This document shows positions 13,117-40,541 of a stretch of 64,000 bases of DNA, piece after piece. The notes beneath the pieces were generated by a model that did not search any database, was not told the DNA's origin, and saw only the letters and a program-made list of their open reading frames with translations. The DNA comes from Ostrea edulis (taxonomy: Eukaryota): positions 90,148,001 through 90,212,000 of the forward strand of contig NC_079169.1 of assembly GCF_947568905.1 (NCBI RefSeq). Direction: 5' to 3'. Numbering within the stretch: position 1 is the first letter of the stretch; every line of letters begins with the position of its first letter. The translations under genes were made by a program, and so were the position numbers.

Positions 13117-13225
13117 ATGTTTGTAAAGTTTTTATCAATTCCACTTTTATCATTTGGATTTTTGGAAATTTTAGCATTCAGCTCTTCCAATATGGCATCT
13201 TCAGCTTACGGAGAAAGAGGCAAAG
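13117..13225 (+). CDS. EGF-TM gene exon 1: signal peptide (MFVKFLSIPLLSFGFLEILAFSSSNMASSAYGERGK)
   Basis: ATG at 13117, hydrophobic N-terminus, phase-1 donor AAAG|GTGGGG compatible with the next exon. Confidence 0.65.
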
Positions 13226-13418
13226 GTGGGGTGGTTAGATGTTGTGAGGAATTTGTCGACATGCCCACAGGCATACCAACTGCAACACCAAGTATATACA
13301 CTAGGCGATAGTCTATATCGATGTTTCGTGTTCATGTTTCGATATTTTCCTGTCTAATATTGTAGTTTATAAGGCAAAGAAAGATAACTCTCAATCTTCA
13401 TATTTTCATTTATTTCAG

Positions 13419-13487
13419 TGGGAGCGGATTTATCAGATATCCAAAAGCGTTCCGTGGATAGTAGAAAACCGATCAGGCCAGTAAAGA
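13419..13487 (+). CDS. EGF-TM gene exon 2 (VGADLSDIQKRSVDSRKPIRPVK)
   Basis: Acceptor TTTTCATTTATTTCAG, donor A|GTAAGA, 69 nt, phase 1-1. Only one reading frame is open. Confidence 0.7.
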
Positions 13488-13832
13488 GTAAGAAAAATAT
13501 GTAGATTTTGGTTTGGTACGAGCAGGTTATATCGACAATTTATGATTTGATAACAGAACTATGCGTGAATCCACTTATTCAGATGGGTTTTTTTTATTCC
13601 AAGAGGTGGGGATAGATCTACTAGGATCCACTCCTTGTAACATTTTTTTTCAAGGTTGGTCCAAGTGCAAGTCCAACTAATGTCTGTGGAAACGAGGGGG
13701 TTATTTATATTCGGTCTTCCCTCCATATACATACACCATCAACTGAAAAAAGTAGTACAATTATGTATTGATGTTATGGAACACTTCTAATCATGCTAAT
13801 ATGATAATTCTGTTGCTTTATGTATTTTTCAG

Positions 13833-13847
13833 CATTTCATGAATTAG
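13833..13847 (+). CDS. EGF-TM gene exon 3: 15-nt microexon (TFHEL)
   Basis: Acceptor TGTATTTTTCAG, strong donor G|GTAAGT, phase 1-1, frame-preserving. Confidence 0.55.
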   Translation, partial: HFMN

Positions 13848-13976
13848 GTAAGTTCTCTTTCAATCAGATATTTATACACAGGCATATTTTTTGAAAACTG
13901 TTGATTTTCGTCCACCAAATATTCCTTCGGACTGGTAGGAAGTGAAAGTACATTTCATTGTTTGGACTGGTAAATT

Positions 13977-15563: not shown

Positions 15564-15617
15564 TAGCTGCAATAAAAAAAAGAAAAAAAATCAGAGAGGG
15601 CTACATTATTGCAGCTA
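15564..15617. mobile_element. 54-bp minimal TAGCTGCA-family TIR element with 9-bp TSD
   Basis: TAGCTGCAATAA...TTATTGCAGCTA flanked by ATGTAACTC at 15555-15563 and 15618-15626. Confidence 0.85.
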
Positions 15618-16049: not shown

Positions 16050-16175
16050 TGGACTCCAATCCTTGTGGACATAATCCCTGTCACAACAGTGGACTTTGTG
16101 AGTGGACCCCCAGGAGTAGCCCGCCCTTCATCTGCCACTGCCCCGTGGGTTTCACCGGAGTTAAGTGCGAAAAAG
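16050..16175 (+). CDS. EGF-TM gene exon 4: complete EGF-like module (VDSNPCGHNPCHNSGLCEWTPRSSPPFICHCPVGFTGVKCEK)
   Basis: Six cysteines in EGF spacing C-x4-C-x5-C-x11-C-x-C-x8-C with GFTG. Acceptor TTTTTTGAAG, donor G|GTGAAG, phase 1-1. Confidence 0.92.
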
Positions 16176-17931: not shown

Positions 17932-18933
17932 CATCCTTCTTTTACTTACAATTTACATAATCACCAGTAATTGATGTACAGTGTGATAATTTTATTCATA
18001 CTCGATGATTATTTAACCATAAATTAGGATTCGACGTATCGATATTCACACCTTTCGCTAAAACTTCCGAACATTGAATGGAAACCTTTGATGCTACAGT
18101 ATAATAAAGTCAATGACTTTGGTAGAGTATTGACTGTCACTACTTCATTCATCATTGGAAATTCACTGAAAAGAAATGGTACAATCATTTATTAGGCAGG
18201 GTAATCATAGATTATATTAATCTTGAAAGTATCTTTGGCTAAATCAGGCACTTACCACGAGGGGTATGGGTACAATATGTTTTTTAGAATTGCTCTCCGT
18301 TTTTTTGTCCATCTTCGGTAGTCATGTGTCGGTCAAAAAACTTTTGAATTTCTGGAACGGTTGAATCAATTTCAACCAACTTTGTTATATGTAATATCTA
18401 TTGTTCAAGGGGGAAACATTGAGAATTTCTTGGACTCTGTATCCCTATGTCTCGAGGATTGTGACCAAAACTATAAAAATTGATGTAATCATCATCTGTC
18501 TGCCTGCCCGTCATTTTTCTCTTCGTCTGTCTGTAATTTTAGCATTGTTCATTTTAAGTCAATGTGCCAGTAACTATGAAAACTATAAGGAGTCTTTTGG
18601 ATTAAAATCGCCTACTTATAGAATTTTATTTGAATTTACTTCAAAGCTCAATTGATATGTTTTCCAGTTGCATCTTTAGATTGTTTTCTTCATTGTTGAA
18701 TGTCTTTGGTAAGTGATTTTGGAACAGATATTATGAAACACCCCGAACTTCTCCTTTTCTTACGAAAGCAGACCAAATTATAGTCAAATGATTTCGTTCA
18801 ACAAATTTTTATCTAATCCGATTTAAAAAAAAAAAAAAAAAATCCTTTGTAGACTTGCATGGTGTTAAAGCTGAGGGTGGTGGTAAGCCTAAACTTTATT
18901 CACTTTTAAAGAATGGCATAGTTTTGTGATTGA

Positions 18934-20782: not shown

Positions 20783-20940
20783 AAACCCGTCCAAAGAATG
20801 GAAATATGTCGTTTAACGATGTTATCAACCTGATTGACAATAAAACAGCTACCCAGATGCTGGCGGTGTTTGGTGGAACAGTACTCGGCATTATCCTGAT
20901 TATCACAGTCCACTGCTGCAGGGTCATACGTAGAAAGCAA
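20783..20940 (+). CDS. EGF-TM gene exon 5: stalk, transmembrane helix and basic stop-transfer
   Basis: Phase-1 acceptor TTTTCTTTATCAATTTACAAG. Peptide ETRPKNGNMSFNDVINLIDNKTATQ-MLAVFGGTVLGIILIITVHCC-RVIRRKQ, with N-glycosylation sequons NMS and NKT before the helix. The donor is either GT at 20941 or GC at 20937. Confidence 0.85.
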
Positions 20941-21056
20941 GTAGATAAGAACTTTTTTCTAATTATAATATGAATTATAGACATTATAATCTGTTTAATA
21001 TCTAAAACGAATAGGGCCGGACACAACCCATGTTCATATTGTATAATTGAATTCAG

Positions 21057-21246
21057 CTGAATGTTATACACAGGAAGAAGGAGGATTCAGATTACCTGAG
21101 GCGGTTACAGTCGCACGACGTCCCTGATACTCTTCCTCCTGGCTGCTGTGAGCTAAGTAACGTTGTGTTCTTTGAGACATTGTGTTGTCTGGGTATCATC
21201 AAAGAGAACATAAAGAAGGAGGTGGCCGAAGTTAACGTTGACCAGT
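21057..21246 (+). CDS. EGF-TM gene exon 6: juxtamembrane cytoplasmic segment
   Basis: Open frame LNVIHRKKEDSDYLRRLQSHDVPDTLPPGCCELSNVVFFETLCCLGIIKENIKKEVAEVNVDQ. Strong phase-1 donor T|GTAAGT at 21247. Alternative acceptor at 21073. Confidence 0.75.
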
Positions 21247-22051
21247 GTAAGTAACATGGAAAGGAAAACAATATAATGTACCAATAGCTCTAGAACCACT
21301 GTAGTATATTTGCAAACTTTGTATGCCACTTTGGTCAATTGCAAATAAATCTTAAGCTTGTAGTCTATGAATATGAGCTTTTCAAGAAAGTGAAAGAATT
21401 TACAAATACCCTTTCGTCCCTGAAAGACATGTATCTAACGAGACGCTTTTAAGAATATTGATACAGGAAGACATTTACCCCCATTTTATTTTCCCATGTT
21501 TTCACCCTCATTCTTTGTCTGTTTATCTAAAACTGGGAAAATTAGAATATACTCAGAGCTCTGAAGTGGCTTGGAACGAAAATGTTGTTCAATACGTCTG
21601 GGCGAAAATAGCACTGCACGAAAATGTCCCTCTAAACAGTAGTGAAAGAGGTTCGCTCCTGAGTTTTATAGCATGCCAAATTTGTCGGAAGTATACTTTT
21701 AATTTCAACATTGAAGGGAAATCGTGACATCAAAAAGAAAAATCTGAGGTCATAGTGCTTGTTATTGAGCTATAGTATACATGTATTAAACTTGGCCTTT
21801 TTGTGCTTAAATTTTACTTCTGATTTATTTGCATAATGTCGACTTGTCTGTCGGTATCAACACAACATAAGCAATGCAAATTAATCATTACATCAAATAG
21901 ATACATAATCATAAAAGTACCACAAAAGGTACATCATACGCCTGTCGGACAGTTAAGAAAATGTCAGTGCAATATCTGTAACTGTATCCATAATGAGAAA
22001 AAGTCTAGAAAACTGTTTGATTTACTTTTAGCCTTAAAGTAGGTGAAGGTC

Positions 22052-24241
22052 TAGCAGCAATAATGTAGCCCTATCCGACTTTTTTTATTCTGAGGTTTTC
22101 AGGATAGGGCTACAATTCCATAGGATCTCCGTTATGGTGCAAAATAATTTTATGAATAACCAATAATAAGCTCCGTGTATTAGTCCCAAATGTTGTTTAC
22201 ACCAAAAGGAGTACCGCTTTTGTGCTTGGGTATGTAGAATACAGGTGTTTTTCATTAAACATCATGTACAACATGCAAAATTCTTCGTCTGCTCTGCCAT
22301 GCTTGTTATCGCGAGATCTCATAGGTGGATCTACTGAAAAACTTAAACATTGAAAATCTGCGCGAAAATGTAGTTACTCGAGCCACTCTGACAAAGAAAG
22401 AAAAGCATATGGTTGCAGAAAGAATTTACACTCTGCTGTTCGTTTTTTAACTTGATATTAAATCTAAACCTTTTTAATACCGACGAAAGAGCTTTCACCT
22501 CCGTACTTGTCCATTGGTGTAAATACTACCTAATATGGCATATGCAAATAACTTGACAATCGGAAGTTGAAACTTCAGTACATCAAACATGGCGCACAAA
22601 TATGAATCGAGAAATTGGAATATATCGAAATTGTTGAAAACTGTAGAATAGAGCCTCACAAATCGTAAGTTGCAGGTTTTTAATTTATATAATGACCAAG
22701 AAACATAGAATATCATTTTATTTACGTAACACATAGAACTTTCCTTGAACTAATCATGCTCCTACCGGATGTACTTAATATGCGTGTTTTAGGGCATGCG
22801 CCATACGTAAATAGGTAAGAAAATATCAACATCCGATGTATTTTTAGAAGCGGAAGCACGTGTATGTAAATTTTCAATAAACGATGTCTTGGCGATTTGT
22901 ACCTTCCCTGAGCTGAGTCTAGTAAGGCTACGTACATGGCGAAAAGTAAGAGTTGGAAATTAAAAATTTTACTTATCCACCTCAAGAAGAAAATTCATAT
23001 ATGAAATTAAAAATAGAAGAATTATCAGACGGTGAAGTAATCTAGTTACATGCTGAGTGGGGGCGCTATAGGTGCCAAACGAATGAAAGAATCATCTTGA
23101 CTTACAACAAATTTTGATTTCCTTGTTACGGAATCTGATGTCTCAATATAGGCCATGCCATTGGCAAAATAATCTCTTCAGGATTAGCATTACCCCCTCT
23201 TCAGTCAAGAGCTTGTAGTCTTTGTACAAAATATTGCATGCAGAGGGCTGGATAAAAACACATTTAGCTTAGCACATCAGATGATTTTTAAATTTTGATA
23301 TAAATGAAAGCAAGTGGACAATAAACATTGTTGACTGTGGTGTAGGGGCAATAAGTAAAACAGTTCAGACAGGCACTGCCCCATCTGCCAGAACAAGTCA
23401 TTATTGAATCTTGACGAAGATAACTGATGATTTTCTTTTATTGTATGGGGGTTTGTATAGAAATGGGAACTAAAATCAAGTGTATTCCCTAAATTTGAAA
23501 ACTTTAGAGATAAGAATGCATATTTGAATCAAATTCTCTTCGAAATATCATTTCAAAAGCCGAGAAAAATTTAAAAATCTAACGAAAAATTACGTTTAAT
23601 AATGAAAACAATCAACCGGAAGTAGTATTTTTCTCAAAATTTGCTGTAAGGAAATATGATTTACCCAGAAAATGAGGAAAAAACTCTGAATTGGACTTAC
23701 TGCAACTTAATCGTCAGAGGAAATTCAAGCTACTTACAAAAATCGAAGATTCAAATCAAAATATCCTCATAACAATTATTAGTTTAATCACCGAGTTGGG
23801 AGTATATCAATCTCTTTAATCACAACCAGTCGAAAATATTTAAAAAATCATTAAAAATTCATTTCTTGATCAATTTCTATAAAAAAAATTCCCAACGAAG
23901 CGCTTATTTATATTCTCTCAATTTCAGATCAGTGCGCATGTGCAAAGGGAAAATCCCGTCTGAAAATAGAAATGCGCATACCTGATAGGGTCGTATCAAT
24001 ATACGGCCCGCTTCAATGTTGCGACGTCATAGGTCACCTAATTTGCATTAATTATTCATAGTTACAAGGAGCAAGGAAAGTTCTATGTGCGTAAAGAAAG
24101 TCAGCACATGTTTAGAATGATCGAAAATGTTGCGGGAATGAACCACTCCCGCATTTGCACCATTACGGAGATCCCAAGGAGTTGTAGTCCCCCCCCCCCC
24201 TCTCAAAGAAAAAATCGGAGAAGGCTACATTATTGCAGCTA
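22052..24241. mobile_element. 2,190-bp non-autonomous TAGCTGCA-family TIR element (AcademH-like)
   Basis: ~90-bp imperfect TIRs (TAGCAGCAATAATGTAGCCCT.../...GGCTACATTATTGCAGCTA). TSD GTGAAGGTC (22043-22051) / GTCAAGGTC (24242-24250), 8 of 9 identical. Confidence 0.8.
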
Positions 24242-24308
24242 GTCAAGGTCCATCAATTAACTAGCTGCAGAACTGTAGCTCTCTGAAAAAATATTTTGAC
24301 ATAACAGA

Positions 24309-25164
24309 GAGCTACAGAGCCACCCCTTATAAAAACCTTCGATTTACGGTGCACAAAAATCTGCGCACGGTTGAGGCCTTATATCGTTGTATTCTGGAGT
24401 TGCTGTCTCATAAATTTAATATCAAAAAATTCTTAACATATTTTCCTACTATACTTGTGTCTAAACATACCTTCAAATATTCATTAAAGCCCCATACGAC
24501 CTGAAAACTCCCAGCTTCAAATGATTTCGTTTGTTGACGTAGCCATGTTAGGTAGCCGGTCAATTCGAATCCTGGTTAATTTCCATACTTGCACAATAAC
24601 GTCTAGATGTGAACTAATATCCCCACAAATATTTTAGCTAAATATTTTAAATAATATATCACCCCAGTGCCTTTAAATAATAATTATTCAAATAGCTAAA
24701 CTCACGGCAATGTGGCTTTCATTAGTCTGGTCCGGTCTCCATCGCTGCCACACGAGTGTTAAGGACTTTAGTAGCATTTTCATGAATCAAGAGCTTATTT
24801 TACCTTTAGAAAAACTTTATTTTTTTAATTTCTATAAATTATTCGTATTGATAATAAATGAAGAGCGAATACATAACATATAACGAATTTTATGAAAACA
24901 GGGTACGAATTGACCGGCTACCTAACATGGCTACGTCAACAAACGAAATCATTTGAAGCTGGGAGTTTTCAGGTCGTATGGGGCTTTAATGAATATTTGA
25001 AGGTATGTTTAGACACAAGTATAGTAGGAAAATATGTTAAGAATTTTTTGATATTAAATTTATGAGACAGCAACTCAAGAATACAACGATATAAGGCCTC
25101 AACCGTGCGCAGCTTTTTGTGCGCTGTAAATCGAAGGTTTTTATAAGGGGTGGCTCTGTAGCTC
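24309..25164. repeat. 856-bp foldback (259-bp inverted arms, about 4 mismatches, 338-bp spacer) inside the left TIR of the 10.9-kb element
   Basis: Arms 24309-24567 and 24906-25164 read as reverse complements (GAGCTACAGAGCCACCCCTTAT...CAATTCG / CGAATTG...ATAAGGGGTGGCTCTGTAGCTC). Confidence 0.92.
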
Positions 25165-27575: not shown

Positions 27576-28766
27576 CATACATGCCAACTTTTGAAAATCC
27601 CCATGGGGGATTTTTCGCGCGACGACCTTTTTTCAACGCTCAAAATTCACGACATTTTACCACGAAAATAAATATTTGTCTTTTCAAATAAAATATCAAT
27701 CTAATCATTATACATGTATCATACATCAAGTGTGTTTGACCATCAACTTTAACAAAACTATATTAAAAAAAACTTTGAAAGATATAGATAAGTATTTTAT
27801 TAAAATCATCTATTCAGCAAAAAATCCTCTCCAACAAGTCACATACATATCAAATAATACTTAAAGTTGCATCCTTTTACACCATATACACATTGGCTGG
27901 TCTATATATCAACATTTAAATTAAAGCACATGCATTTAGGTACGACTACAAAGGCGATCTTGCTTGTCTGTAAACAATTTCATGGGCTTGCAGAGTCTGG
28001 TGGAACAATCTGCATTGCAACCAGAAAAGGAGTGATCTGCCCTGCTATGAAGTTTGCGAACAAAACCTTTGCACCCATGACATCTGAAATAATTACCAAG
28101 AAAACACACATCAAAATATACGTTTTTACTTGTAAAATACTTGTAAAATATAAAAATAAAAATTCAGTACAGACTTGTGCAAATTACGCATCACAAAGTC
28201 TATTGAATACTACGCTATATAGACTATGTAATACATCGCTATAGACAGATAGATTCGGGTAGCCTATATTATCATAGTTGGAAAAACATATATTTTACGT
28301 ACCTTTAATATTGCATATTTTGGATGCTGTCAGCGAGAGGCAAAAATCGGGAATGTCCGATTGTTTCGTGGTGACACTATTATCATTGCCATTCACGTTT
28401 GTGTAAAGGATATGTCAATTTGAAATCCGTCTTCCCGATTAATTACTATCAAAACATGCTTCGCACTGTCCAATAAGCACCCCGACACGGGCAGACCAAG
28501 GAAATTACATCACTCCGATACCATGCGACACAGGTAAACAGCAATGGCTGACTATTGTCCCGATTTCTGATTGGCCAGTTCAGAAATGACGCGGGGTTTC
28601 AAATTCCGGTTGGAAATGGGGGTTTGTTGTCGTAAAATGGGAGACATTTTTAGAAAATCGGGATTTCGGGGTATTTTTGCAATCCCGATCGGGATATCGG
28701 GATTTGCCTTTTCAACTGCTTGAAATCGGGAAAATCCCGCACAAATCGGGAAAGTTGGCATGTATG
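27576..28766 (-). mobile_element. Internally deleted hAT-like DNA transposon with 6-bp TSD
   Basis: TIR CATACATGCCAACTTT / AAAGTTGGCATGTATG; TSD ATTTTA (27570-27575, 28767-28772). Minus-strand remnants FPW..C..C..H, KQSDIPDF and DVMGAKVLFANFIAG..PFLVA..PDS resemble hAT transposase N-terminal motifs. Subterminal AATCGGGA repeats. Confidence 0.72.
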
Positions 28767-29014
28767 ATTTTATCTATAATAAGGAATTTTAATCAAACTA
28801 AATCTAAAAGTTTCATTGACAAGTGAAAATAAGTTCAATAAGACACAATTAATTTGTTTAAATGGAGATTGTGATCAGAATATTAAAACTTAATTGTTTA
28901 CAGTTAAAGAAAAAAGTTACGAATTATATGTTCCAATCTGAATTGAAATTAGACTGGTATATTCGACTCGTCTTCGGTACACCTCAATACAAGGAAGTGT
29001 ATCATAGAGAAGTG

Positions 29015-29497
29015 TATGGAATCCGGATAGGGCCACGTAGTTCACTATCGCACCATCGCGCCATCGAGGTTTGGGTCGATGGTGCGATGGCGCGATAATG
29101 CGATGACGATGGCGCGATGGTGCGATGACGATGACGCGATGGTGCGATAGCGCGATGACGATGGTAAGATGGCACGATAATGCGATAACGATGGTGCGAT
29201 GGAGCGATACTGCGATGGTACGATGGCGATGATGCGATAACGCGATATCATTATGCCATCGGTATCGCGTTATCGCATCATCGCCATCGTACCATCGCGT
29301 CATCGTAGTATCGCTCCATCGCACTATCGCATCATCGTTATCGCATTATCGTGCCATCTTACCATCGTCATCGCACCATCGCGTCATCGCACCATCGCGC
29401 CATCGTCATCGCATTATCGCGCCATCGCACCATCGACCCAAACCTCGATGATGCGATGGTGCGATAGTGAACTACGTGGCCCTATCCGTATTCCATA
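29015..29497. mobile_element. 483-bp CpG-rich foldback MITE, IS3EU-like (copy 1)
   Basis: TIR TATGGAATCCGGATAGGGCCACGTAGTTCACTATCGCACCATCG. Interior is a CGATG block followed by a CATCG block. 6-bp TSD GAAGTG (29009-29014, 29498-29503). Confidence 0.88.
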
Positions 29498-29897
29498 GAA
29501 GTGGGATTCTTTTTCTCTTGCCATTATTTTGACTTGCACAGCAATTTATATTTTTAGCCTAAATTTCAAATCATAATACATATTTGTGCATGTGTCTGCT
29601 TTCAGTGTACTTTTTGGGGACTTTGAGTGATCGATTCACCACCCTTTGAACAAATGTATTTTGAGATCCTCAAAGGAATCCTAGATTTGTCAAGGTATCA
29701 CATCTTCCTATAATTGAATGTAATGATTATGTTTTCAAGATTTTAAAGGAGATTATTCTGTCTACAAAGTGAGATCATTTTATCTGTCCTTAAATTTTTA
29801 ACCAAGCTATACACTGCATGCAGATAATTTTGTTTCATAAAAAATTGTTATAGTATTTAAACATCTTTTTATGCATGGTTGTATATGTACATGTAAC

Positions 29898-30367
29898 TAT
29901 GGAATCCGGAAAGGGCCACATAGTTCACTATCGCACCATCGCATCATCGAGGTTTGGGTCGATGGTGCGATGGCGCGATAATGCGATGACGATGGCGCGA
30001 TGACGATGACGCGATGGCGCGATGACGATGGTAAGATACCGCGATAATGCGATAACGATGGTGCGATAGTGCAATGGAGCGATAGTGCGATGACGCGATG
30101 GTACGATGGCGATGATGCGATACCGTCATCGCGCCATCGGTATCGCGTTATCGCATCATCGTCATCGTACCATCGCGTCATCGTAGTATCGCTCCATCGC
30201 ACTATCGCACCATCGTTATCGCATTATCGCGTCATCGTACCATCATCATCGCGTCATCGCACCATCGCGCCATCGTCATCGCATTATCGCGTCATCGCAC
30301 CATCGATCCAAACCTCGATGGCGCGATGGTGCGGTAGTGAACTACGTGGCCCTATCCAGATTCCATA
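29898..30367. mobile_element. 470-bp CpG-rich foldback MITE, IS3EU-like (copy 2)
   Basis: Same TIR family as copy 1. 6-bp TSD TGTAAC (29892-29897, 30368-30373). Confidence 0.88.
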
Positions 30368-30896
30368 TGTAACAGAACTTATGAAGTACATGTATATGTG
30401 TTCAGTGTTTTATTATGTAAAATCTACTTAGGGGTACAACTACATTTACAAATTAATTATGTACATGCACACAAAGGCACAAACACAATTTCTACCTCAA
30501 AACTTTCATCAGATACAAGTCAAAAAATTTAAGATTATAAGAATTAAGCTAATAATTATACATGTAGCAGATCTTAGAAATATTTTCATGAAGAGATACA
30601 TTATTGCTTATGCTATCACTTTGCCTGTATTTCTGTCTTGGTTGAGTATATAGTACACTTGCAGATGACACACACTGTTTCATGGAATACTGCATCTTAA
30701 TTACTGACAAATCGTATAATTTCATAATATTACATTTTTTGTTACATACTAAATAAGTGCATGATTTTTTTCCTTTTAGAAGCCATGTTTTAATTGCTGC
30801 CCATCAAATAGTACTGTGTCTTGCATGTGTAAATTGTAAGTATTCAGTGTCTTAGTATAAATCGTTAGTATTTTGAAGCATGATGTCACAGTTAGT

Positions 30897-31462
30897 TTAT
30901 TATGTCTCCCCTCTTCCAGGGGGATCGAGACATTGTTTTTGTATTTTCTGTATGTCCATCTGTCTGTCACAAATTCTTGTGAACGCTTCTCCTCCTACCG
31001 TATATGGCTTATCCGCTAGACTTGAAACTTTGTACAATGCTTCAATGCCATATGGAGATGTGCATATTGTTGGGACGGGAGGATCCAATTATTTTCCTAA
31101 AAGTTACAGTGGATCTAAGAGGAGTGGAAGATGTTTAAATAGCTTGTGAATGCTTCTCCTCTGATATGGATTATCAGAGTTAGACTTAAACTTTTCACAA
31201 TACTTCAATGCCATTTGCAGATTGACATATATTGTAGGGATAGGAAGATCCAATTGTTTTCTTAAAATCTTAGGGGTGGAGGGTATAAAATAATTTGTGA
31301 ACACTTCTATATGGCTTATCGGAGTTCATAAATGCTTATATGCTTCTGTTCATGCTTTCTCCTCAATACCATACAGTACAATAAGGGGCAGTTTCATTTG
31401 GAGAACTTCCAATTTGGGGAGCTCAGGGAGACATTTGTATTTCCTAATAAACAATCTTTAGT
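30897..31462 (+). mobile_element. Degenerate HINE with ~170-bp core repeats
   Basis: 5' TTATGTCTCCCC...GAGACATTGTTTT followed by a (TCTG) tract; cores starting TTGTGAAYGCTTCTCCTC; 3' subterminal GGGAGACAT. Confidence 0.65.
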
Positions 31463-31656
31463 TTCAAATTGTGATTATGGTATTTTTGTTTCTCTTCTAT
31501 GAAATGTTAATTATATTAAATATCTATTTTGAAAAAAAAATCATAAGATATATATGTAAAGTTATAATTAAAATTTTTCTTTCTGGTAAAATAGGCATAG
31601 TGTATATGCAGTGTAGGTAGAGATAAATCACATAGCAAAGAAAAATTCCAAATTGA

Positions 31657-32715
31657 TTTTAGCTCACATGAGCTGAAAGCTTGAAAGAGCAATTCTGATA
31701 ACTTTTTGCTGTCATCAGTCCATCTGTACAACCTTTTCAACTTCTCCAGAACCATAGTGTTAATTTCAGCCTAACTTGCCACCCTTCACAGGGGAGATAA
31801 TCACAAAATAGGGTGGGTTCATTAAAAGTCTTCTCAAGAACCACAGGGCCAGAAGAGCTGAAATTTACAAGCAAGCTTCCTGGCATAGTGTAGATTCAGG
31901 TTTATTAAAATAATGACCCCCTAGGGATAGGATGGGGCCACAATAGGGGATCAAGGTTTTACATGCAAAGGTATAAGGAGAATCTTTTAAAAATCTTCTT
32001 CTCAAGAACCACTGGGCCAGGAAAGCACAAATTTGCAAGAAAGCTTCCTGACATAGTGCAGATTCAAGTTTGATAACATCATGGCCCCCGGGGGTAGGAT
32101 GGGGCAACAATTGGGGATCAAAGTTTTACATACAAATATATAGGGAAAATATAACATCTTCTCAAGAACCAATGGACCAGAAAGTAAGACAAAAGTTTAT
32201 ATTTACATGAAAGCTCCCTGACATAGTGCAGATTCAAATTTGTTAAAATCATAGCTCCCAGGGGTAGGATGGGGCCACAATAGGGGATAAAAATTTCACA
32301 TACAAATATATAAGGAAAATCTATTGTTTTTTAATTTTAAAGAATCACTGGGCCAGAAAGTCTTACATTTATGTCAAAGCTTGCTGACATAGTGCAGATT
32401 TAAGTTTGTTAAAATTACTCCCCCCCCCCCCCCCCCCCCCCCCAGGGGAAGGGTGTGGCCACAATAGGGGATCAAAGTTTAACATACAAATATATAGGGA
32501 AAATCTTTTTCTCAAGAAGCCATTGGGACAACGAAATTTACATTTACATGAAAGCTTCCTGACATAGTGCAGATTCAATTTTGTAATAATCATAGTTATG
32601 GGGGTAAGTTGGGTCCACAATAAGGATCAAAGCTTTACATGCAAATATACAAGAACAATCTTTAAATATGGGCCAAGGTAACTCATGCGAGCAATGTGGT
32701 CCATGGGCCTCTTGT
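31657..32715 (+). mobile_element. CvA/pearl-like HINE with ~5 copies of a ~165-bp satellite-related core
   Basis: 5' TTTTAGCTCACATGAGCTGAAAGC. Cores CTCAAGAACCACTGGGCCAG...AAGCTTCCTGACATAGTGCAGATTCAAG at about 31833, 32001, 32161, 32341 and 32511. 3' GCGAGCAATGTGGTCCATGGGCCTCTTG. Confidence 0.88.
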
Positions 32716-33639
32716 CTTTAATGCTATTGATACTAAATTGAAACAGAATAGATATCTAGAAGGAGTAATTAAGACAATCAATCAGTATTCATATTTCATA
32801 CTGGAAAATAAAATTTAGATAGCTTATATTGATCATTGTGAATTTTTTTTTCTTTCAGAGATTCATTTTGAGGAAATAGCTGGTGTGCAGTGCACATTCC
32901 TAAATGAATTCATCAGTTTACATTAAGGATCTACCTTCAAATCCTGTAATCTGGGATGCTCTAAAGTGCATGTCACAGACTAAAGTTATAAAAATAACTT
33001 CCAAGAATTTTTAAGAAATTGTTATAACTTTGAAATGTATGTATATACATGTATACTGATATTGAATTAAATTTTATAAAATTTCAACATCTGATTTTAT
33101 GTATATATAGACATATTGTAAAAAAAATTCCACTCTAAAGGTTTAATTTCTTTAATATTTAAGACTTAAAAAAAACTTTTGCAGATACAGTGGTGTAACA
33201 TTGTCTTACTTTCTGATCAATACATATAGATAAGAAAACTATGTATATTTCAATAAATGTGGAAAATTTTCAACCATTGAATTTCCATTTATGAGTAGTA
33301 ACTTGTACATAGTACTTCCTAACCAACTTTGATACTGTATAACTATAACTACCTGCTTGCATGCATTGCAGAGCACGTACAGCCGTGGTAATAATTCACA
33401 TTTGCTGATGAATTGCTTTAGCATAAAGAGTAAAATTAGTACGTTAAGTTTTAAATTTATGAAAATGCATATTAGGCTTTTCACAGATATTTCTTAAAAT
33501 ATATAGAAAATATGTATATATTCATATAATTGTATAAATCCTGCTAATCTAGCTTCTTCCTAAGTGAGGTGTATGGCACGCCATATTTATACAATGTATC
33601 TACCGGGTATTCCTTTAAGGATTTCATATATAATTTATG

Positions 33640-34240
33640 AAATATCTTCTATTTCTGATATCTAATAAATCTTATAAGATATATATCTCATATAATATAT
33701 AGTTTATAAAATATTTAAGATATATATTATAAATTATGAAAGATATCTCCTAAGCCTTATAAGATATCTTGTATATCAAATGATATAATGTTTAACAGAT
33801 ATCTTATAAAACATAAAATATCTTAAATGTTTTATAAGATTTCTCACAAGCTTTATAAGTTATCTTACATATCTTATAAGATATCTCATAAACAATTTAA
33901 AAAAAAATATAGCTCAAACTTTGATATATCTTATAATATACATGCAAGATATCTTGTATGTTTTATGATATATATCTTATAAAAGTAAATTCATATGATA
34001 CATTATAAAGTTAACAAGATGTCTTATAAAATTTCGTTTTTGAGATATCTTATTAAGTTTGAGATATCTTAAAAGACATAAGATATATGTTTTAGAAGAT
34101 AACTTATAAAATATATAACATATTTTATCATCTTTTATCAGATATCCAATTATAAAGGATACAATTAATATATTTCATAAACTTTAGAAGATATCTTGAA
34201 AGTTCAATAACATATCTTATAAAATTTATGAGATATCTTT
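33640..34240. repeat. Degenerate AT-rich array built from palindromic ATCTTATAAGAT / AGATATCT modules
   Basis: Perfect palindromes at 33669-33680 and 33869-33884, with many partial copies throughout. Confidence 0.7.
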
Positions 34241-36291
34241 AAAGAGGAATAAATCTAAAAATAGAATGCTATAGAAGTGTAGTAATAGAATCTAACAATA
34301 ACATCAATTTCATTTTTTCTGTGACGATGATTAACTTATAATGTGATATATTATTTTGTGCAGTTTATATGAGTCGCAAATATACTATAAGGCAGGAATC
34401 GCACATTTTCTTCACCAATTCTATTTTCAATGCAAAATATTCTCTTTTTGTAACCAATGCTGAAGATAACTTAATTTGTTAAAAATCCTTGACAAGAGAA
34501 AAAAAATTGATTTGTCCTGTGACTTGCCCACTCTACAAAATCCTAAATCGGGGAGGGGGAACTTTTCTCCTAAGTTCGAAAAAATTCATGATTTCTTAAT
34601 TCGGAGGGGGAGGGGGTGTTAAAAACTTACTACCAAAGATAATTTTTTTTATACAAATTCTCCATGAATACATGCATATATGTTTGCAGTTCTGTATTAC
34701 CCTAAATACCACTATAAATGAAAAATGAAAGAAAGCAGTCTCCCCAATTTCTTTATTTGCATATGTTATAAACAATGGAATTATTACCGTTGCCCCCCCC
34801 CCCCCCCCCCCGAACAAAAGAAGAAAAGACCCTCCCCCCTCATGACACGACAATAAGACTAAATATCAGATAAACTACAATCTAAATCTTTAAATGACTT
34901 TAACTTCCTGAGCTTTTCACTATTTCACAATCATCGCTGGTATGACAGTACTTAATTGAATTTTCTAATTTGCATTGATGATACATGTCTATTACAGTAT
35001 ATAGAAAATGACTATAGCTTTGGCATATTTATTTCCGGTTTCCTTCACTGCGGAATTTGACCTCACCTCTAACCTTTTAATGGGTCAAAAAACCCACGTG
35101 GTGTAAATTTAAATAACAATAACGTTAGTAGGGGTATGTTATGTCAAAATATTTTTTCAGAGAGCTACAGTTCTGCAGCTATCAATTAACCTGAAATGCA
35201 AATTGGATCACTCTTCCTCTGAGACGAAGGTTGTGACTACATTTCGGTGTAATACCTGTATCCATAACGAAAAAAATCTGTAAAACTTCGACCTACTTTT
35301 AGCCCTAAAGTAAGTCACGGTCCACCAATCCAGCTGAAATGCAAAGTCACTCTTACGCTTCTTTACAGCGTCATTACATAATACGTCCAGTGAGTGCATG
35401 GTTTGTCCTATTAACTTCTCTTACCATTGGTATTGAAGATGTTCATGTGGGAAAGATTTTGATATTCAATTTTTAAAGAAAGAAAATTACACGTTGTTGA
35501 ACTTAGTCAGTTTTGAGGAAATATTATAAAGTGATGCAAGAGTAAAATGGTTTGTCCTTGTAACTCCTCTCACAGTTTTGAAGTTAAGGCCTTTGTAAAC
35601 AACTTTAAGATGTGCGTATTGTAAGGATTTTGCTTCTCAACATATGAACGTCTTGTTGAGGGAGGTTTAAGGAGGTATGAGAACCCAAGAAATTCATAAT
35701 AAAAGGAATGTGTTCCATTCATATGATATTGAGCTGATCTACATGTATGTAATAGAGTTTGCATTAACTCTTGCAAAATTACATTTTTATGTTACATTGA
35801 AAATTTAAAAAAAAAATCCTAATTCTGCAAGAATTTTGAAAACGGAATTTTAAAAAGTGGATAACAATAATGGATAACAAATTTGAATTATTGGTCAAAA
35901 TACAAAATTTTCATACACAATGTCTGGAAAAATGATATAGAGGTTTTTTAGAATCGGTATTCTGTTTGGAAAAAAATAACCAAATTGATGAATTCACAAC
36001 ATTTGAATCTCTACTACTTGCACCATAAATTACAAAATTGAAGTACACGTCCAGGATTGCAAATATTGACAATAGATTGGATAAAACAGAAACTATAAAA
36101 TCGTGCAGATTTAGGACATTTTGATGAAACAATCCTTCCGCCATAGAATGTAGTCCTTTCCAAATCCTTTCAAAATTTGTATCGACATGAAATTTTTCAA
36201 CTGGATAATTTAAAGTGATAAATGTACATGTATAATATAAGTTCTTGATATTAAATTTATTTTTCTTTGATTAACTTTCCCTCTATTTCAG

Positions 36292-39200
36292 TGGTGTCTG
36301 ATTTGAAGCTTGCCAGAAGTTTATCTAAGAGTAATTCAAAATCCAGGGATAGATTAATCCCCGACGAAAAAGGAAGCAAACAATCTTTAAGGTCCAATCG
36401 TAGCAAAATACCCTCTGACCACAGAATTAACCAGCAAAAGAGGCCCAAATCAGAAAGTAAGACATGCAATTTTGCTAGGGAAAGTCATGATTCTTATGTC
36501 ATCAATGTTGAAGGTAACGAGACGGACACATCCAGCACTAAATTGAACATTGAATATCCAGAGTTGCGTAGGAATTCTTCTAGATCGTTATCCAGGTCAA
36601 CAGAGGGTGTTGATCAGACTGTGAAAGGAATGAAGTGTAGTTGTGGTAAATATACTACAATGGAAACGTCAAAAACCAGAACAGATAGTGAAAGACCCTA
36701 TGTAGCTACGTCTGATCAAATAATCCACGCGGAGGATATTCTTGCCGAGAAAAACATTAGAGTCCTGTCACATCCCAATTCATTAGTTGGAGTCCAGCAT
36801 ATGTCGAATCAACATGGCAGACCAATCTCAAAACTTAAAAGTGAAAGTTTTCGCAGTTTGAGTTCTAGAACACAACACGAGGACGCTATCCAAACAAAAG
36901 GATCACGACAACATACATCACAACCTACACCAGATATAGCAACCACGGACAAACGAGAGTACTGCAGAGTGTGTCAACGAAATCCAAGTTATCAATCAAT
37001 CCTTAAAACTCAACAGAGGCAGTATGTTCCTGACATTTCGTCAGGAAGAGGGAAAAGAATTTCAGCTCAAACACAGACTACTCCAACTCTCCTTTCTGTA
37101 GTAGAACGACCAATATCACCGCCACCCCCGGCACCCACATCAGAACCACCACTCTCATCACATTCTGGATTTGCACGTGTAGATAAGACCCAAAATTTCC
37201 CATCTTGTACATGGTATGCAAATCCTCTGTCAGCTCAAACACAGACTACTCCAACTCTCCTTTCTGTAGTAGAACGACCAATATCACCGCCACCCCCGGC
37301 ACCCACATCAGAACCACCACTCTCATCACATTCTGGATTTACTCGTGTAGACAAAACCCAAAATTTTCCTTCTTGTGCATTGAGTACAGGTCATTTTCTG
37401 GGCTTTGATAAGTCAGCACAAACACAGACAACTCCATCTCTACGTTCTGTGCTAGAACGACCAATACCACCACCACCACCCCTGGCACCCACATCAGAAC
37501 CACCACTCTCATCACATTCTGGATTTACTCGTGTAGACAAAACCCAAAATTTTCCTTCTTGTGCATTGAGTACAGGTCATTTTCTGGGCTTTGATAAGTC
37601 AGCACAAACACAGACAACTCCATCTCTACGTTCTGTGCTAGAACGACCAATACCACCACCACCACCCCTGGCACCCACATCAGAACCACCACTCTCATCA
37701 CATTCTGGATTTGTACGTAAAGACAAATCCCAAAATTTTCCATCTTGTGTATTGAATCTAAGTCCTGTTCTGGGCTGTGATAAGTCGGAATTTACTGATG
37801 TAAACAAGAAGCGTTTCTCATTGGAAGACTATACTGCAGATCATCAGAGAGATATGCAGGAAAGCTATTCCCATTCTCCTAGTAACGCAATTCCAAATGA
37901 TGACGTTACGTATTTACAGCAAAATGTAAGACAGGGCAGTAATCCTACAGTTTCAGTGCCACATTCAACGTCGCTCCGTGGATCTGAACGTGTTCGAAGG
38001 ATTACTTCAGACCAAGAGGAGAGGTTACAAGGAAACTACATTATTCGACCAGGAAAATCGGCCCATTATCTCCAGGATCGACTACAGGAAAACCATTCCA
38101 AATCTTCTCATTCTGAGAATTACATGAAAGCAGACGGAAAAAATATATTGTCAAATCATAAATTTTCAAATCAAGAATATGGTGATGACCCTACAAACCA
38201 GCTTTCGGGAGATGAGAAGATATGGTATATTGAGAATTACCACCCCATCGGTACTCGTATGCACGCAAGAAGAAGTTATTCACAGCCAGCAGTATCTCAC
38301 AAATCGAACGATATTTCAGATCGTAATGAAATTTACTACAACGAATACTACGCACCAAAATATTCTGAATATCTAAACAATGAGGCAGAGCATGTTGTGA
38401 TGCCTATATACAAAGTTCCAACCACACAGTCGTCAGCAAACTCGTACCAAACCACGTATCGAGAACATTTTGGAGCCTCTGGTGTGCAGAATATTAGAAA
38501 TCGAACTAGATCAGATCGTCAGTTGGTTGATTCTGGAATTGAAGTCAACGGAAGCAGAGAGACAGACTACTCAGGAGAAAGACATGGACACATCAGATCT
38601 CCACAGCCACAATATCAACAATTACGAGAGAGATATGAGAGATCTGACTACAGCTCGGACAGAGGAAGAGGACAGCGTAGACAATATGATTTCGAATCCA
38701 GATCTTCAAGTAGAGAAGGAAGGTATGACCAAAGACCCTCGAATAACCGTAATTTGGAAAATGACCAACAGGTTTTACAATTTCTTAACGAACGGGGAAG
38801 TGTCAGTAGTTTCGTGGAAACTAACCGTCGTAGTCCACAGGACGCCAGACGATCTCGTTTTAGTAAATACGATCAAAGGCGCCGCTCAGCTCCTTCGGCG
38901 TCGTTTCCTTCTGATTATGAAGAGGAAGACCTGCAGGATGACAACGATGTTATAGAGTATTTACACCAAAAGAAAACTGTTAGTGGTCTGATAGAAAACA
39001 GTCGACAGACAACGCCAAGGACTGTCACTCGGAGATGTGAAAATCGCCGCTCAAATATAGCCGACAACGAAAGAGACAGAGAAAGTGATGAAGAAGTGTT
39101 GTATAACCTCAGACAAAGAAGAAGTGTTAGCGGTAGAAGAGGAACGGATGATCGGGATGTACGAGAAAGGGTTATGCAAAATGTTAAAGAGGATTACGAA

Positions 39201-40541
39201 GATGTGATACCGCAATCCCTGGAAACAATGTCGGGCGTCAATCAAGAATTGAAATACACTAAAATGTTTGCGACGAATTCTACTGTATACCCACCAACTG
39301 CCGCAAAAATAGGAGAGCGAAAGGACATAAGAGTACCCATTATGTCAAAAAATGTGTTTTCTCCACCATCTGCGAGCAGAGAAAATACGCAACAGAGGCA
39401 TACTGCAGAAAATGACGACCCTACAACGCGTTATCAAGATTACTTGAGGAGAAGTATGATTCGTTGGCCCGTGAGAGACATTGACATCAGGCGGTCAAGA
39501 GATGCCCTAAAAGGAAATAGATTGCAAGAGTTGTTGAACAAAGACAATACATCGTTTGAGCAACCTCGAGACCAAACACATGCAGCTCGCACTCCATCAA
39601 GAAAAGCATACGCAAGAGGTCACCATGGAAACAACAATAATATAGGATCAAGAGCGTATCTAAATGACACACGGGAAGAAACCTATGACTATTCCCAAAA
39701 CCATATCAATCGAAGAGAGGGGATTCAGTATAATGAAGAACCTTATTGTGATAGAAATGAAACGTTTACTGGGGATGAAAAAAATAGTTTTCTGGAGCAA
39801 GTAGAACAAAGAGGTAACAATAACAGGATGGCTTATCAGAGCAGAAATTCGCGAATGAGAGAACGATCACAAACTTCATCTGAAAGAGCCAAAGATCTTC
39901 CATGGAACGCATTGCAAAACATATCTCAATTAGGAAACGATAGTAGTTTAGACAACGGAAGACTCAATCCGAAACACAGCACTCCAAAGGCGTCTCCCAT
40001 TGATCCAGAGCTACACAGAATTTGGGAAAATCGAAATAATCAAGAGTCGGGGTCTCTGCTAGAACGTCTGCGCAACAGTCAGACGATTCAGGATAAGTTT
40101 TTCTCTAGATCTGATAATTTAGAAAACACTGAAACGGGAGGTGACGTAGACTGCGACAATTGGAATACAGATGCTGAGTCCAGAGTGGGTAGAAGACGTA
40201 GCAGGGAGAGAGCACTCCACAACCAACAAATCGTCTATAACAATCAGGCCGAACACGTGTCGAGATCCGGGAACATCGGTAATAGTAGCGCACAAACATT
40301 GACTTCTCTTCACGGTGTACCTTCTGCGAGTTTCCACAACAGAGTATCTTCAGCTTTTTTGGGACCCCAAAGCTTACTTGGAGATAAGCAGGAGGCCCAG
40401 AGACAATCATTTATCGGTTGTCACAAGTCGGGTGGAAACACTGTGTATCCTACCGGTCGCAAAAGACAATTCCCGAGAAATTCGGATGCAATTAACTCTG
40501 AAGAATCCAACCAAAGAAATTTTCCACCTCGCGAATATTGA
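36292..40541 (+). CDS. EGF-TM gene exon 7: 4.25-kb terminal exon encoding a Ser/Arg/Pro/Asp-rich disordered region
   Basis: Uninterrupted 1424-codon frame (the track's TTG start is not a plausible eukaryotic start). Pyrimidine-rich acceptor TTTCCCTCTATTTCAG at 36291 needs phase 1, matching the exon 6 donor (T+TG = Leu). The spliced CDS is 4917 nt = 1638 aa plus stop. Confidence in coding status is high; confidence in the join is moderate. Confidence 0.85.
37062..37784 (+). repeat. Four in-frame coding repeats (168/183/186/186 bp) with SAQTQT and polyproline motifs
   Basis: Units start at 37062, 37230, 37413 and 37599. All length differences are multiples of 3. Confidence 0.92.

What the first reader, a model, noticed from the sequence alone, without database searches (positions are those of the whole stretch)
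13117..40541. Hidden 7-exon gene: single-EGF type I membrane protein with a ~1,470-aa disordered cytoplasmic tail
Seen: five consecutive phase-1 introns or exon ends link signal peptide (13117), pro-segment with a KR site, microexon, a one-exon EGF module (16050-16175) and a TM exon with CC-RVIRRK. Exon 6 ends in an otherwise orphan strong phase-1 donor (21247), and the 4.25-kb ORF begins at an otherwise orphan phase-1 acceptor (36291). Joining them gives a 1638-aa frame with no stops. Once the two TE insertions are removed, intron 6 shrinks from 15,045 to 1,917 bp. Established: EGF + TM + long tail recalls neuregulins and TGF-alpha-type precursors. Inference: a tiny ectodomain on a very large scaffold-like tail is an architecture I do not recognise as a named family; it could be a receptor-like or back-signalling ligand.
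Basis: partly seen in the sequence, partly recalled or inferred. Interest (0 to 1): 0.82.

Follow-up and report, generated by a model that had tools for sequence, protein, structure and literature searches.

The report
Oyster-only EGF membrane protein gene

Summary
The core observation holds. The window is Ostrea edulis (G000:C6:90148001-90212000). The small 5' exons and the 4.25-kb ORF are one gene, identical to RefSeq LOC125678011, "uncharacterized protein", 1663 aa, so it is not hidden. It has 8 coding exons, not 7. Exon 1 ends at 13291, not 13225. The TM-exon intron is GC-AG (20937-21073).

A spliced RNA contig uses the donor at 21246. It then carries exactly 800 more letters, which equals 36292 to the last unique 31-mer before the tandem repeat. 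Five oyster species in four genera keep the same architecture and junction. In Saccostrea echinata the last intron is about 276 bp, against 15,045 bp here, where it holds two TIR elements.

The EGF module is Notch-type, not ErbB-ligand-type. The tail has no Pfam domain, no PDB relative and low AF2 confidence, yet dN/dS is about 0.27. It carries invariant short motifs: TQT, RRSYSQP, three VLxYLxxRRSVS and a 31-residue invariant block. An exhaustive profile search of 1.84 billion proteins found only oyster proteins.

Most likely it is a membrane-anchored, motif-rich scaffold. This is inferred, and the LC8 docking test gave only weak support. Interest is modest.

The parts
13117..13291 (+). Coding exon 1 (175 nt, ends in phase 1). 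It holds the start codon, a hydrophobic N-terminus that is a putative signal peptide (residues about 1-23), and the first part of the pro-segment with a conserved CC.
   Evidence: With the other exons it reproduces RefSeq protein P0001 exactly. Kyte-Doolittle 19-residue mean is 1.81 at residues 1-19. The GERGK...CC.E segment is conserved in Saccostrea and C. virginica.
13419..13487 (+). Coding exon 2 (69 nt, phase 1). It holds the conserved dibasic site KR|S.D.RKP.
   Evidence: The site is present in O. edulis, S. echinata, S. cucullata and C. virginica. In M. gigas it is seen in fragment P0022.
13833..13847 (+). Coding exon 3, a 15-nt microexon (phase 1).
   Evidence: S. echinata has a 15-nt exon at the same position.
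16050..16175 (+). Coding exon 4 (126 nt, phase 1): one complete EGF-like module with six Cys, spacing 4-5-11-1-8.
   Evidence: Pfam PF00008 gives 21.0 bits against a cut-off of 21.5 here, and 25.0 and 24.5 bits in Saccostrea. RNA contig record 9 of run X2 lies on 16048-16174.
18853..18882 (+). Coding exon 5, a 30-nt microexon (DLHGVKAEGG, phase 1).
   Evidence: It is needed to reproduce P0001. There is a 30-letter gap between the laid pieces of the X2 RNA contig. S. echinata has a 30-nt exon here.
20783..20936 (+). Coding exon 6 (154 nt, ends in phase 2): a juxtamembrane ectodomain stub, the TM helix (residues about 160-184) and HCC-RVIRRK. The donor is GC (GCAAGT at 20937). RefSeq instead ends the exon at 20940 with a GT donor.
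   Evidence: The X2 contig piece ends at 20936 with 0 other letters. Kyte-Doolittle maximum is 2.28 at residue 165. S. echinata has the same GC donor.
21074..21246 (+). Coding exon 7 (173 nt, ends in phase 1): a cytoplasmic juxtamembrane block with the invariant Cys box PPGCCELSN.VFFETLCCLG. RefSeq starts this exon at 21078.
   Evidence: The X2 contig piece lies on 21074-21246 and does not continue into 21247-21500. The motif is invariant in 5 species.
21247..36291 (+). Intron 7 (15,045 bp, phase 1, GT-AG), swollen by two TIR elements (about 22.05-24.25 kb and 24262-35181).
   Evidence: TIRs are shown. The orthologous intron in S. echinata is about 276 bp.
36292..40541 (+). Coding exon 8 (4,250 nt including the stop): residues 248-1663 of the cytoplasmic tail.
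   Evidence: 100% identical to P0001. dN/dS against S. echinata is 0.27. AF2 mean pLDDT is 37. The tail lies on the disordered side of the charge-hydropathy boundary in 48 of 56 windows.
37062..37786 (+). In-frame tandem array of 3.9 copies of 186 nt (62 aa). Each copy carries SAQTQTTP (a candidate LC8 site), a polyproline stretch and F.RVDK.QNFPS.
   Evidence: TRF output.

Best explanation
Gene structure: this is a single-copy, expressed, RefSeq-annotated gene of Ostrea edulis (LOC125678011). It has 8 coding exons spread over 27.4 kb and encodes a 1663-aa type I membrane protein.

Protein layout, in order:
- a signal peptide;
- a short pro-segment ending in a conserved Lys-Arg site;
- one Notch-type EGF module;
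- a stalk of about 37 residues;
- one TM helix that ends in HCC followed by basic residues;
- an invariant double-CC box;
- a cytoplasmic tail of about 1,470 residues.

The tail is mostly unstructured but under purifying selection. It is studded with short motifs that are invariant across oysters.

Proposed function: the protein acts mainly through its tail, as a membrane-anchored and probably palmitoylated scaffold regulated by phosphorylation. It would recruit cytosolic partners through linear motifs:
- TQT sites for the LC8/DYNLL dimer;
- RRSYSQP and three VLxYLxxRRSVS sites for basophilic kinases and 14-3-3;
- several invariant blocks with unknown partners.

The small processed ectodomain would serve as a tether or sensor.

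What is shown: gene structure, architecture, conservation, restriction to oysters and lack of a folded tail domain. What is inferred: topology, cleavage at KR, palmitoylation, and every partner.
For: Gene model:
- The exons reproduce RefSeq P0001 exactly.
- A 1539-nt spliced contig in run X2 covers exons 4-7 and stops laying at 21246.
- Its 800 remaining letters equal 36292-37091 to the base, which is the last unique 31-mer before the tandem repeat.
- The same 8-exon structure and the junction Q|LVS(D/E)(L/I)KL occur in S. echinata, S. cucullata, M. gigas and C. virginica.
- The gene is single copy in its own genome.

Architecture:
- Hydropathy peaks occur only at residues 1-19 and 160-184, and RVIRRK follows the TM helix.
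- The EGF module is supported.

Tail:
- There is no Pfam hit, no PDB hit and no atlas hit.
- AF2 gives pLDDT 37 with only short helices.
- 70% of residues are disorder-promoting, and the tail lies on the disordered side of the charge-hydropathy boundary.
- dN/dS is 0.27 overall and 0.12-0.18 for residues 875-1329.
- The motifs are invariant in 5 species.

LC8:
- The TQT anchor sits in a disordered context with Ser at position -4 (PMC6607443).
- Complex prediction with two LC8 chains plus residues 493-528 gave 'weak support'. The score was 0.60 and the best control 0.02.
- The mark was reached by 51 of 78 solved complexes and 2 of 108 mismatched pairs. At 0.60 or under, however, only 5 of those 78 solved complexes passed, and so did all 4 mismatches that passed.
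- The runs agree in at least 58% of their contacts, and the partner's pLDDT is at least 51.
Against: - No direct read of the letters across 21246|36292 was displayed. The junction rests on RefSeq, the orthologues and the contig-length match.
- No partner was tested physically.
- The LC8 docking pass is weak and may come from the model's memory of TQT complexes.
- The TQT flanks are only partly favourable: Ala rather than a basic residue at -3, Thr rather than P/D/E at +2, and Pro at -4 in C. virginica.
- Many TQT peptides do not bind LC8 (PMC6607443).
- Low AF2 confidence may partly reflect the 5-sequence alignment.
- The conserved ectodomain (KR site and EGF) argues that the outside also matters.
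- Tissue and subcellular location are unknown.
Confidence: 0.5

Rival explanations
1. It is a precursor of a shed or juxtacrine EGF-type ligand, used like neuregulin, TGF-alpha or Spitz. The KR site and a stalk cleavage would release or expose the EGF module to a receptor on another cell. The long tail would control trafficking, or would be released by intramembrane proteolysis for back-signalling.
For: - The layout is signal peptide, pro-segment with conserved KR, single EGF about 37 residues from the TM, then tail.
- The ectodomain is conserved in all oysters with full-length models.
- Basic clusters in the tail could act as nuclear localisation signals. This is read directly from the sequence, not tested.
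Against: - The cysteine spacing 4-5-11-1-8 and the lack of GxRC do not fit the ErbB-ligand signature.
- The module is closer to Notch, EDIL3 and factor IX EGF repeats (E about 6e-6) than to EGF or TGF-alpha (E 0.06-0.1).
- 88% of the protein, and its most strongly constrained blocks, lie in the tail.
Confidence: 0.2
2. It is a receptor-like or adhesion-type sensor. The EGF stub would bind an extracellular partner in cis or trans, and the tail would transduce the signal by changing its phosphorylation and partner occupancy. This overlaps with the scaffold reading but places the trigger outside the cell.
For: - The ectodomain is conserved with a Notch-type EGF module.
- The tail carries many conserved basophilic phospho-acceptor motifs.
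Against: - The mature ectodomain is only about 90 residues, with a single module.
- No kinase, phosphatase, death, PDZ-binding or other signalling domain was found.
- Nothing distinguishes this reading from the scaffold reading with the present data.
Confidence: 0.15
3. The join is an annotation artefact. Under this reading the 5' exons (13117-21246) and the 4.25-kb ORF belong to two different transcripts, or the ORF is a decaying or TE-derived reading frame.
For: - The intron is 15 kb long and full of transposons.
- No junction-spanning letters were displayed.
- Some database entries, such as P0006, start with a read-through of the acceptor region.
Against: - The RNA contig ends its laid part exactly at 21246. 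It carries 800 more letters, matching 36292-37091 to the base.
- The same junction is present in five species. In S. echinata the intron is only about 276 bp.
- The ORF has no ATG-led upstream context, and its frame needs one base from the previous exon.
- dN/dS is 0.27 over 1,228 codons.
Confidence: 0.03

Closest known systems
Neuregulins and TGF-alpha/Spitz-type ErbB ligand precursors
   Same: Both are type I membrane precursors with a single EGF module close to the membrane and a cytoplasmic tail. In NRG1 the tail is about 370 aa, largely disordered and able to back-signal (established knowledge).
   Different: - The EGF module lacks the ErbB-ligand cysteine spacing and the GxRC motif.
- It scores better against Notch-type repeats.
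- The tail is four times longer and has no sequence similarity to these families.
- There are no Ig, kringle or other accompanying domains.
CSPG5 / neuroglycan C (CALEB) and tomoregulins (TMEFF1/2)
   Same: These are single-pass proteins in which one membrane-proximal EGF module is the only or last folded ectodomain element (from knowledge, not tested here).
   Different: - Those proteins have large glycosylated or follistatin-bearing ectodomains and short tails.
- Here the ectodomain is about 90-140 residues and the tail about 1,470.
- No sequence relationship was found in any search.
Multivalent LC8 (DYNLL) clients such as ASCIZ/ATMIN, Chica, Nup159 and KANK1
   Same: All have several TQT-anchored 8-residue sites spaced along an intrinsically disordered region. 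O. edulis has four SAQTQTTP sites 56-62 residues apart.
   Different: - Known clients are soluble or peripheral proteins, whereas this one is an integral membrane protein.
- Only one site is conserved in the other oysters.
- Binding is supported only weakly by docking and is not measured.
- There is no sequence homology.
Taxonomically restricted (orphan) gene families of bivalves
   Same: The family is found only in Ostreidae among 1.84 billion representative proteins. It is low-complexity and prone to repeat expansion.
   Different: - Many such oyster families are secreted shell-matrix or immune proteins (from knowledge).
- Here the repetitive part is predicted to be cytoplasmic.
- It is strongly constrained in long blocks.

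Membership tests
ErbB/EGFR ligand precursors (EGF, TGF-alpha, neuregulin, Spitz) | EGF motif with spacing C-x7-C-x4-5-C-x10-13-C-x-C-x8-GxRC (established knowledge) | tested here: not met
   The spacing is 4-5-11-1-8 in O. edulis and both Saccostrea species. The last loop ends GVKC, GESC or GKSC, so there is no GxRC.
ErbB/EGFR ligand precursors (EGF, TGF-alpha, neuregulin, Spitz) | The EGF module is closer in sequence to the ligand family than to generic EGF repeats | tested here: not met
   A profile of the N-terminus hits Notch1, EDIL3 and Pvfp-5 EGF modules at E about 6e-6. EGF and the EGF/TGF-alpha chimera score only E 0.056-0.099.
ErbB/EGFR ligand precursors (EGF, TGF-alpha, neuregulin, Spitz) | Type I membrane precursor with a membrane-proximal EGF module | tested here: met
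   The N-terminus is hydrophobic. The EGF module spans residues 92-125 and the TM helix about 160-184, followed by basic residues.
ErbB/EGFR ligand precursors (EGF, TGF-alpha, neuregulin, Spitz) | Binds and activates an ErbB receptor | not testable with these tools
   This needs a binding or activation assay.
Pfam EGF (PF00008) | Score at or above the gathering threshold, and six cysteines | tested here: inconclusive
   O. edulis scores 21.0 bits against a cut-off of 21.5. S. echinata scores 25.0 and S. cucullata 24.5. Six Cys are present in all. The fold assignment is safe even though the formal threshold is narrowly missed in this species.
Notch ligands (Delta/Serrate/Jagged) | DSL domain and tandem EGF repeats | tested here: not met
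   Pfam reports a single EGF module and no DSL or MNNL domain.
LC8/DYNLL clients | TQT anchor inside a disordered region, with at least 5 residues on its N-terminal side | tested here: met
   The motif [SP]A[QE]TQTTP is present in all five species, and four times in O. edulis. The context is disordered. The criteria are from PMC6607443.
LC8/DYNLL clients | Favourable flanks: an H-bonding residue at -4, a basic residue at -3, P/D/E at +2, and no proline before the anchor | tested here: inconclusive
   Position -4 is Ser, which fits. Position -3 is Ala and +2 is Thr, which do not. C. virginica has Pro at -4 (against the criteria).
LC8/DYNLL clients | Physical binding to the LC8 dimer | tested here: inconclusive
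   Docking only, with the verdict 'weak support'. The score was 0.60 and the best control 0.02. The mark was reached by 51 of 78 solved complexes and 2 of 108 mismatched pairs. At 0.60 or under only 5 of the 78 passed, as did all 4 passing mismatches. The runs agree in at least 58% of contacts and the partner's pLDDT is at least 51. ITC or a pull-down is needed.
14-3-3 clients (mode 1) | R-S-x-pS-x-P motif (established knowledge) | tested here: met
   RRSYSQP is invariant in all five species. Phosphorylation and binding cannot be tested here.
Ostreidae-restricted gene family | No detectable relatives outside oysters | tested here: met
   The tail profile searched against 1.84e9 representatives gave 4 hits: three are oyster proteins, and the fourth (P0007) is an unnamed JGI metagenome fragment that most resembles the O. 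edulis tail. Word searches with the N-terminal half gave only oysters. Limit: the N-terminal module was searched only by words and only within length bands of 275-875 and 915-2910 aa.

The most novel reading that the evidence does not exclude
The family is an oyster-born class of integral-membrane hub adaptor. A palmitoylated single-pass anchor would carry a long disordered tail that assembles LC8 dimers, 14-3-3 and still unknown partners at a membrane. Lineage-specific cassette amplification would tune its valency: 4 copies of a 62-aa cassette in Ostrea and 7 copies of a 24-aa cassette in Magallana. The tail might also be released by proteolysis to signal. This would be a transmembrane multivalent LC8 client with no homologue in model organisms.
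Probability: 0.2. Interest if true: 0.5.

Novelty: new variant of a known kind. Interest (0 to 1): 0.3.

Why it matters
The gene model is already public, so finding it adds nothing. This analysis adds four things:
- a corrected structure, with a GC-AG intron and a one-residue change from RefSeq;
- evidence that the family is confined to oysters yet strongly constrained along a tail with no detectable folded domain;
- a list of invariant linear motifs that can be tested;
- an example of a 276-bp intron inflated to 15 kb by two transposon insertions without loss of splicing.

If the scaffold idea holds, this would be a rare case of a membrane-integral multivalent LC8/14-3-3 client. It would also be a tractable example of how a lineage-restricted disordered protein gains and multiplies motifs. 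Otherwise it is one more uncharacterised, lineage-specific membrane protein.

Tried and rejected
- AF2 of residues 1-330 with a 4-sequence alignment gave mean pLDDT 37. The model is unusable, so no fold search was run.
- AF2 of the tail gave pLDDT 37. It was used only as a sign that no confident fold exists.
- The ESM Atlas gave no usable hit for the tail. For residues 130-330 the scores of 0.77-0.81 are at the level shuffled proteins reach, so they were discarded.
- The PDB profile search with the tail gave nothing at E <= 1.
- The look-up of encoding contigs for P0001 found it not on record, because the window's own genome is withheld.
- A literature search for the four LOC identifiers found 0 papers.
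- A words search of the scan's earlier findings found nothing.
- My first exon model, with acceptor 21074 and the GT donor at 20941, broke the frame. It was resolved by RefSeq and then by the RNA contig's GC donor.
- Regex scans of O. edulis found no RVxF (PP1) motif or D-box. PPxY is absent from O. edulis and M. gigas and present only in Saccostrea and C. virginica, so it is not a family feature. An SxIP-like SKIP in O. edulis is not conserved, judged by eye.
- Runs X1, X5 and X6 look like DNA, with contigs continuous over introns. They say nothing about splicing.
- The single read-laying run could not cover both sides of the 15-kb intron, so the junction letters were not read.


Full report
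IDENTITY AND GENE MODEL

The 4.25-kb ORF (36267-40541) translated from 36294 is 100% identical to the C-terminal 1415 residues of NCBI 'uncharacterized protein LOC125678011 [Ostrea edulis]' (P0001, 1663 aa). The window is G000:C6:90148001-90212000.

It contains the EGF module, the TM helix and the junction ...EVNVDQ|LVSDLKL.

A script that joins window exons reproduces P0001 exactly with eight coding exons:
- 13117-13291
- 13419-13487
- 13833-13847
- 16050-16175
- 18853-18882
- 20783-20940
- 21078-21246
- 36292-40541

The gene is annotated rather than hidden. It used a donor at 13225 instead of 13291, which drops 22 residues including a conserved CC. It missed the 30-nt microexon at 18853-18882. 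My own first attempt with the GT donor at 20941 and the acceptor at 21074 broke the frame.

RNA EVIDENCE

Six runs hold the ORF. Four were laid on 15900-21500.

Run X2 has only 89 million letters yet holds 83% of the ORF words. It contains a 1539-letter contig (record 9) that is spliced:
- Letters 255-381 lie on 16048-16174.
- Letters 412-566 lie on 20782-20936.
- Letters 567-739 lie on 21074-21246.
- All three pieces have 0 mismatches.

The 30 letters missing between the first two pieces fit the microexon.

The split 20936|21074 means the intron starts GCAAGT and ends CAG, so it is a GC-AG intron. The peptide then reads RRK-K-KED, where RefSeq has RRK-Q-KED. S. echinata has the same GC donor, and its RefSeq protein reads SRKKKED.

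The contig does not continue into 21247-21500, so the transcript does not run on to the TAA at 21252. It carries 800 further letters. If the next exon starts at 36292, those letters end at 37091. The first 31-mer of exon 8 that recurs in the window starts at 37062, so the last unique 31-mer ends at 37091. That is exactly where a k=31 assembly should break. I take this base-exact fit as strong indirect support for 21246|36292.

X1, X5 and X6 behave like DNA.

ORTHOLOGUES

Full-length or nearly full-length relatives exist in Saccostrea echinata (1536 aa), S. cucullata (1543 aa), Magallana gigas (1486 aa, N-terminally truncated, plus fragment K1PHJ2) and Crassostrea virginica (LOC111119534, 1534 aa). 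All keep the following features:
- the dibasic site KR|S.D.RKP (in M. gigas seen in fragment K1PHJ2; its long model is N-terminally truncated);
- the EGF module;
- HCCRV at the end of the TM helix;
- the box PPGCCELSN.VFFETLCCLG;
- the junction Q|LVS(D/E)(L/I)KL.

Mapping P0002 on its genomic locus L007 gives the same eight exons of 144/69/15/126/30/~154/~173/3,894 nt. The last intron there is only about 276 bp.

In O. edulis that intron is 15,045 bp. It contains a 10.9-kb element bounded by 54-nt TIRs (24262-24315 / 35128-35181). Just upstream lies an element of about 2.2 kb with subterminal inverted repeats. Neither has an ORF of 150 aa or more. I did not verify the exact ends of the smaller element.

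PROTEIN ANATOMY

Hydropathy peaks exceed 1.6 (19-residue window) only at residues 1-19 and 160-184, plus a weaker one at the Cys box. RVIRRK follows the TM helix, which fits a type I topology by the positive-inside rule. This topology is an inference.

Pfam finds only EGF. The score is 21.0 bits against a cut-off of 21.5 here, and above the cut-off in both Saccostrea species. The cysteine spacing is 4-5-11-1-8 with no GxRC. A profile of the N-terminus hits Notch1, EDIL3, mussel Pvfp-5 and factor IX EGF modules at E about 6e-6, but EGF and TGF-alpha only at E 0.06-0.1. The module is therefore a generic Notch-type EGF, not an ErbB-ligand EGF.

The tail (residues 186-1663) has these properties:
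- It is 12.5% Ser and 9.9% Arg, and 70% of residues are disorder-promoting.
- It lies on the disordered side of the charge-hydropathy boundary in 48 of 56 windows.
- It has no Pfam, PDB or Atlas relative.
- AF2 gives mean pLDDT 37 with only about 20 short helices. The alignment had just 5 sequences, so this is weak evidence by itself.

The tail is nevertheless constrained. dN/dS against S. echinata is 0.27 over 1,228 codons and 0.12-0.18 for residues 875-1329. dS is about 1.3, which is saturated, so the ratio is approximate.

Motifs invariant in all five species:
- [SP]A[QE]TQTTP
- F.RVDK.QNFPS
- ARRSYSQP, which has the form of a mode-1 14-3-3 site
- YQTTYREHFG
- DSGIEVNGSR
- three VLxYLxxRRSVS-type sites (the third is changed in C. 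virginica)
- KIGERKDI.VPI
- the 31-residue block SMIR(W/F)PV.DIDIRRSRDALKGNRLQELLNKD

A 186-nt in-frame tandem array (37062-37786, 3.9 copies, 91% matches) gives O. edulis four copies of the TQT-polyproline-RVDK.QNFPS cassette. M. gigas instead has seven copies of a 24-aa unit holding only the RVDK.QNFPS part. A Logan M. gigas transcript has three.

DISTRIBUTION

An exhaustive HMMER profile search with the tail alignment against 1.84 billion representative proteins gave four hits. Three are oyster proteins. The fourth (P0007) is an unnamed JGI metagenome fragment that most resembles the O. edulis tail.

Word searches with residues 60-330 (candidates of 915-2910 aa) and with residues 60-560 (275-875 aa) found only oysters. 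The gene is single copy in its own genome. No paper mentions the LOC identifiers.

MECHANISM

The bulk of the conserved information lies in a tail with no detectable fold, made of short invariant motifs. That is the signature of a linear-motif scaffold.

For one candidate partner I found an intronless LC8/DYNLL gene in the same assembly (L004:1498-1764:-). I docked two LC8 chains with residues 493-528. The verdict was 'weak support':
- The score was 0.60 and the best control 0.02.
- The mark was reached by 51 of 78 solved complexes and 2 of 108 mismatched pairs.
- At 0.60 or under, only 5 of those 78 passed, as did all 4 mismatches that passed.
- The runs agree in at least 58% of contacts, and the partner's pLDDT is at least 51.
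- The pass may reflect the model's memory of TQT complexes.

By the LC8Pred criteria (PMC6607443) the site has a proper anchor and Ser at -4. It lacks a basic residue at -3 and P/D/E at +2. That paper also stresses that many TQT peptides do not bind.

I therefore rate LC8 recruitment as plausible, not shown. Palmitoylation of HCC and the CC..CC box, cleavage at KR, and 14-3-3 binding are inferences from motif form only.

VERDICT

The gene model and architecture are real. My confidence in the structure is about 0.95. The family is unnamed and restricted to oysters, but the gene is already public and the function is open. It is a new variant of a known kind: a type I EGF-module membrane protein with a disordered tail. 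Interest is modest.

Noticed in passing
window 20937-21073 (intron 6): The RefSeq model of LOC125678011 uses a GT donor at 20941 and an acceptor at 21077. The RNA contig and the S. echinata orthologue use a GC-AG intron (GCAAGT donor at 20937, acceptor at 21073). The protein changes by one residue, RRKQKED to RRKKKED.
   Followed up: yes
window 37062-37786, compared with M. gigas P0004 residues 426-581 and P0005: Neighbouring tail cassettes have been amplified independently. O. edulis has 4 copies of a 62-aa cassette (TQT + polyproline + RVDK.QNFPS). M. gigas has 7 copies of a 24-aa cassette (RVDK.QNFPS only), and a Logan M. gigas transcript has only 3. The shared amplified element is F.RVDK.QNFPS, and its partner is unknown.
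   Followed up: partly
window 17022-17395 and 17583-17956 (intron 4): A foldback element of about 200 bp (arms roughly 17165-17260 and 17262-17356) and a neighbouring repeat reach summed contig depths of 27,000-800,000 in the laid runs. Flanking DNA reaches 10-30. These are very high-copy repeats of this genome, and they are also present in the RNA run.
   Followed up: no
window 3810-8157: A 4.3-kb satellite array with nested periods of 36, 44 and 80 bp (about 105 copies of the 44-mer). It has extreme strand asymmetry, with GC skew -0.48 and AT skew +0.62.
   Followed up: no
window 11131-11655 (+): A 174-aa ORF has a sub-threshold match to the C-terminal catalytic part of tyrosine recombinases (PF00589, 23.8 bits against a cut-off of 27.1). 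It is probably a remnant of a Crypton- or DIRS-like element, 1.5 kb upstream of the gene's start codon.
   Followed up: partly
window ~41290-41900: A nearly perfect foldback or palindromic element of about 600 bp lies about 750 bp downstream of the stop codon. This was seen when reading the sequence.
   Followed up: no
window 58400-58960 (+): A 186-aa ATG-led ORF rich in Pro, Ser and Ala has no Pfam match. It may be the terminal exon of the next gene downstream.
   Followed up: partly
L004:1498-1764 (-) = G000:C34, and G000:C4:64420528-64421609: The assembly holds an intronless, full-length canonical LC8/DYNLL gene (89 aa) on a small unplaced contig (C34). It also holds an intron-split copy on chromosome C4. 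The intronless copy could be a retrogene or could come from another organism in the sample.
   Followed up: no
window 54353-54490: A run of 138 N, which is an assembly gap or masked stretch. It was left untouched.
   Followed up: no
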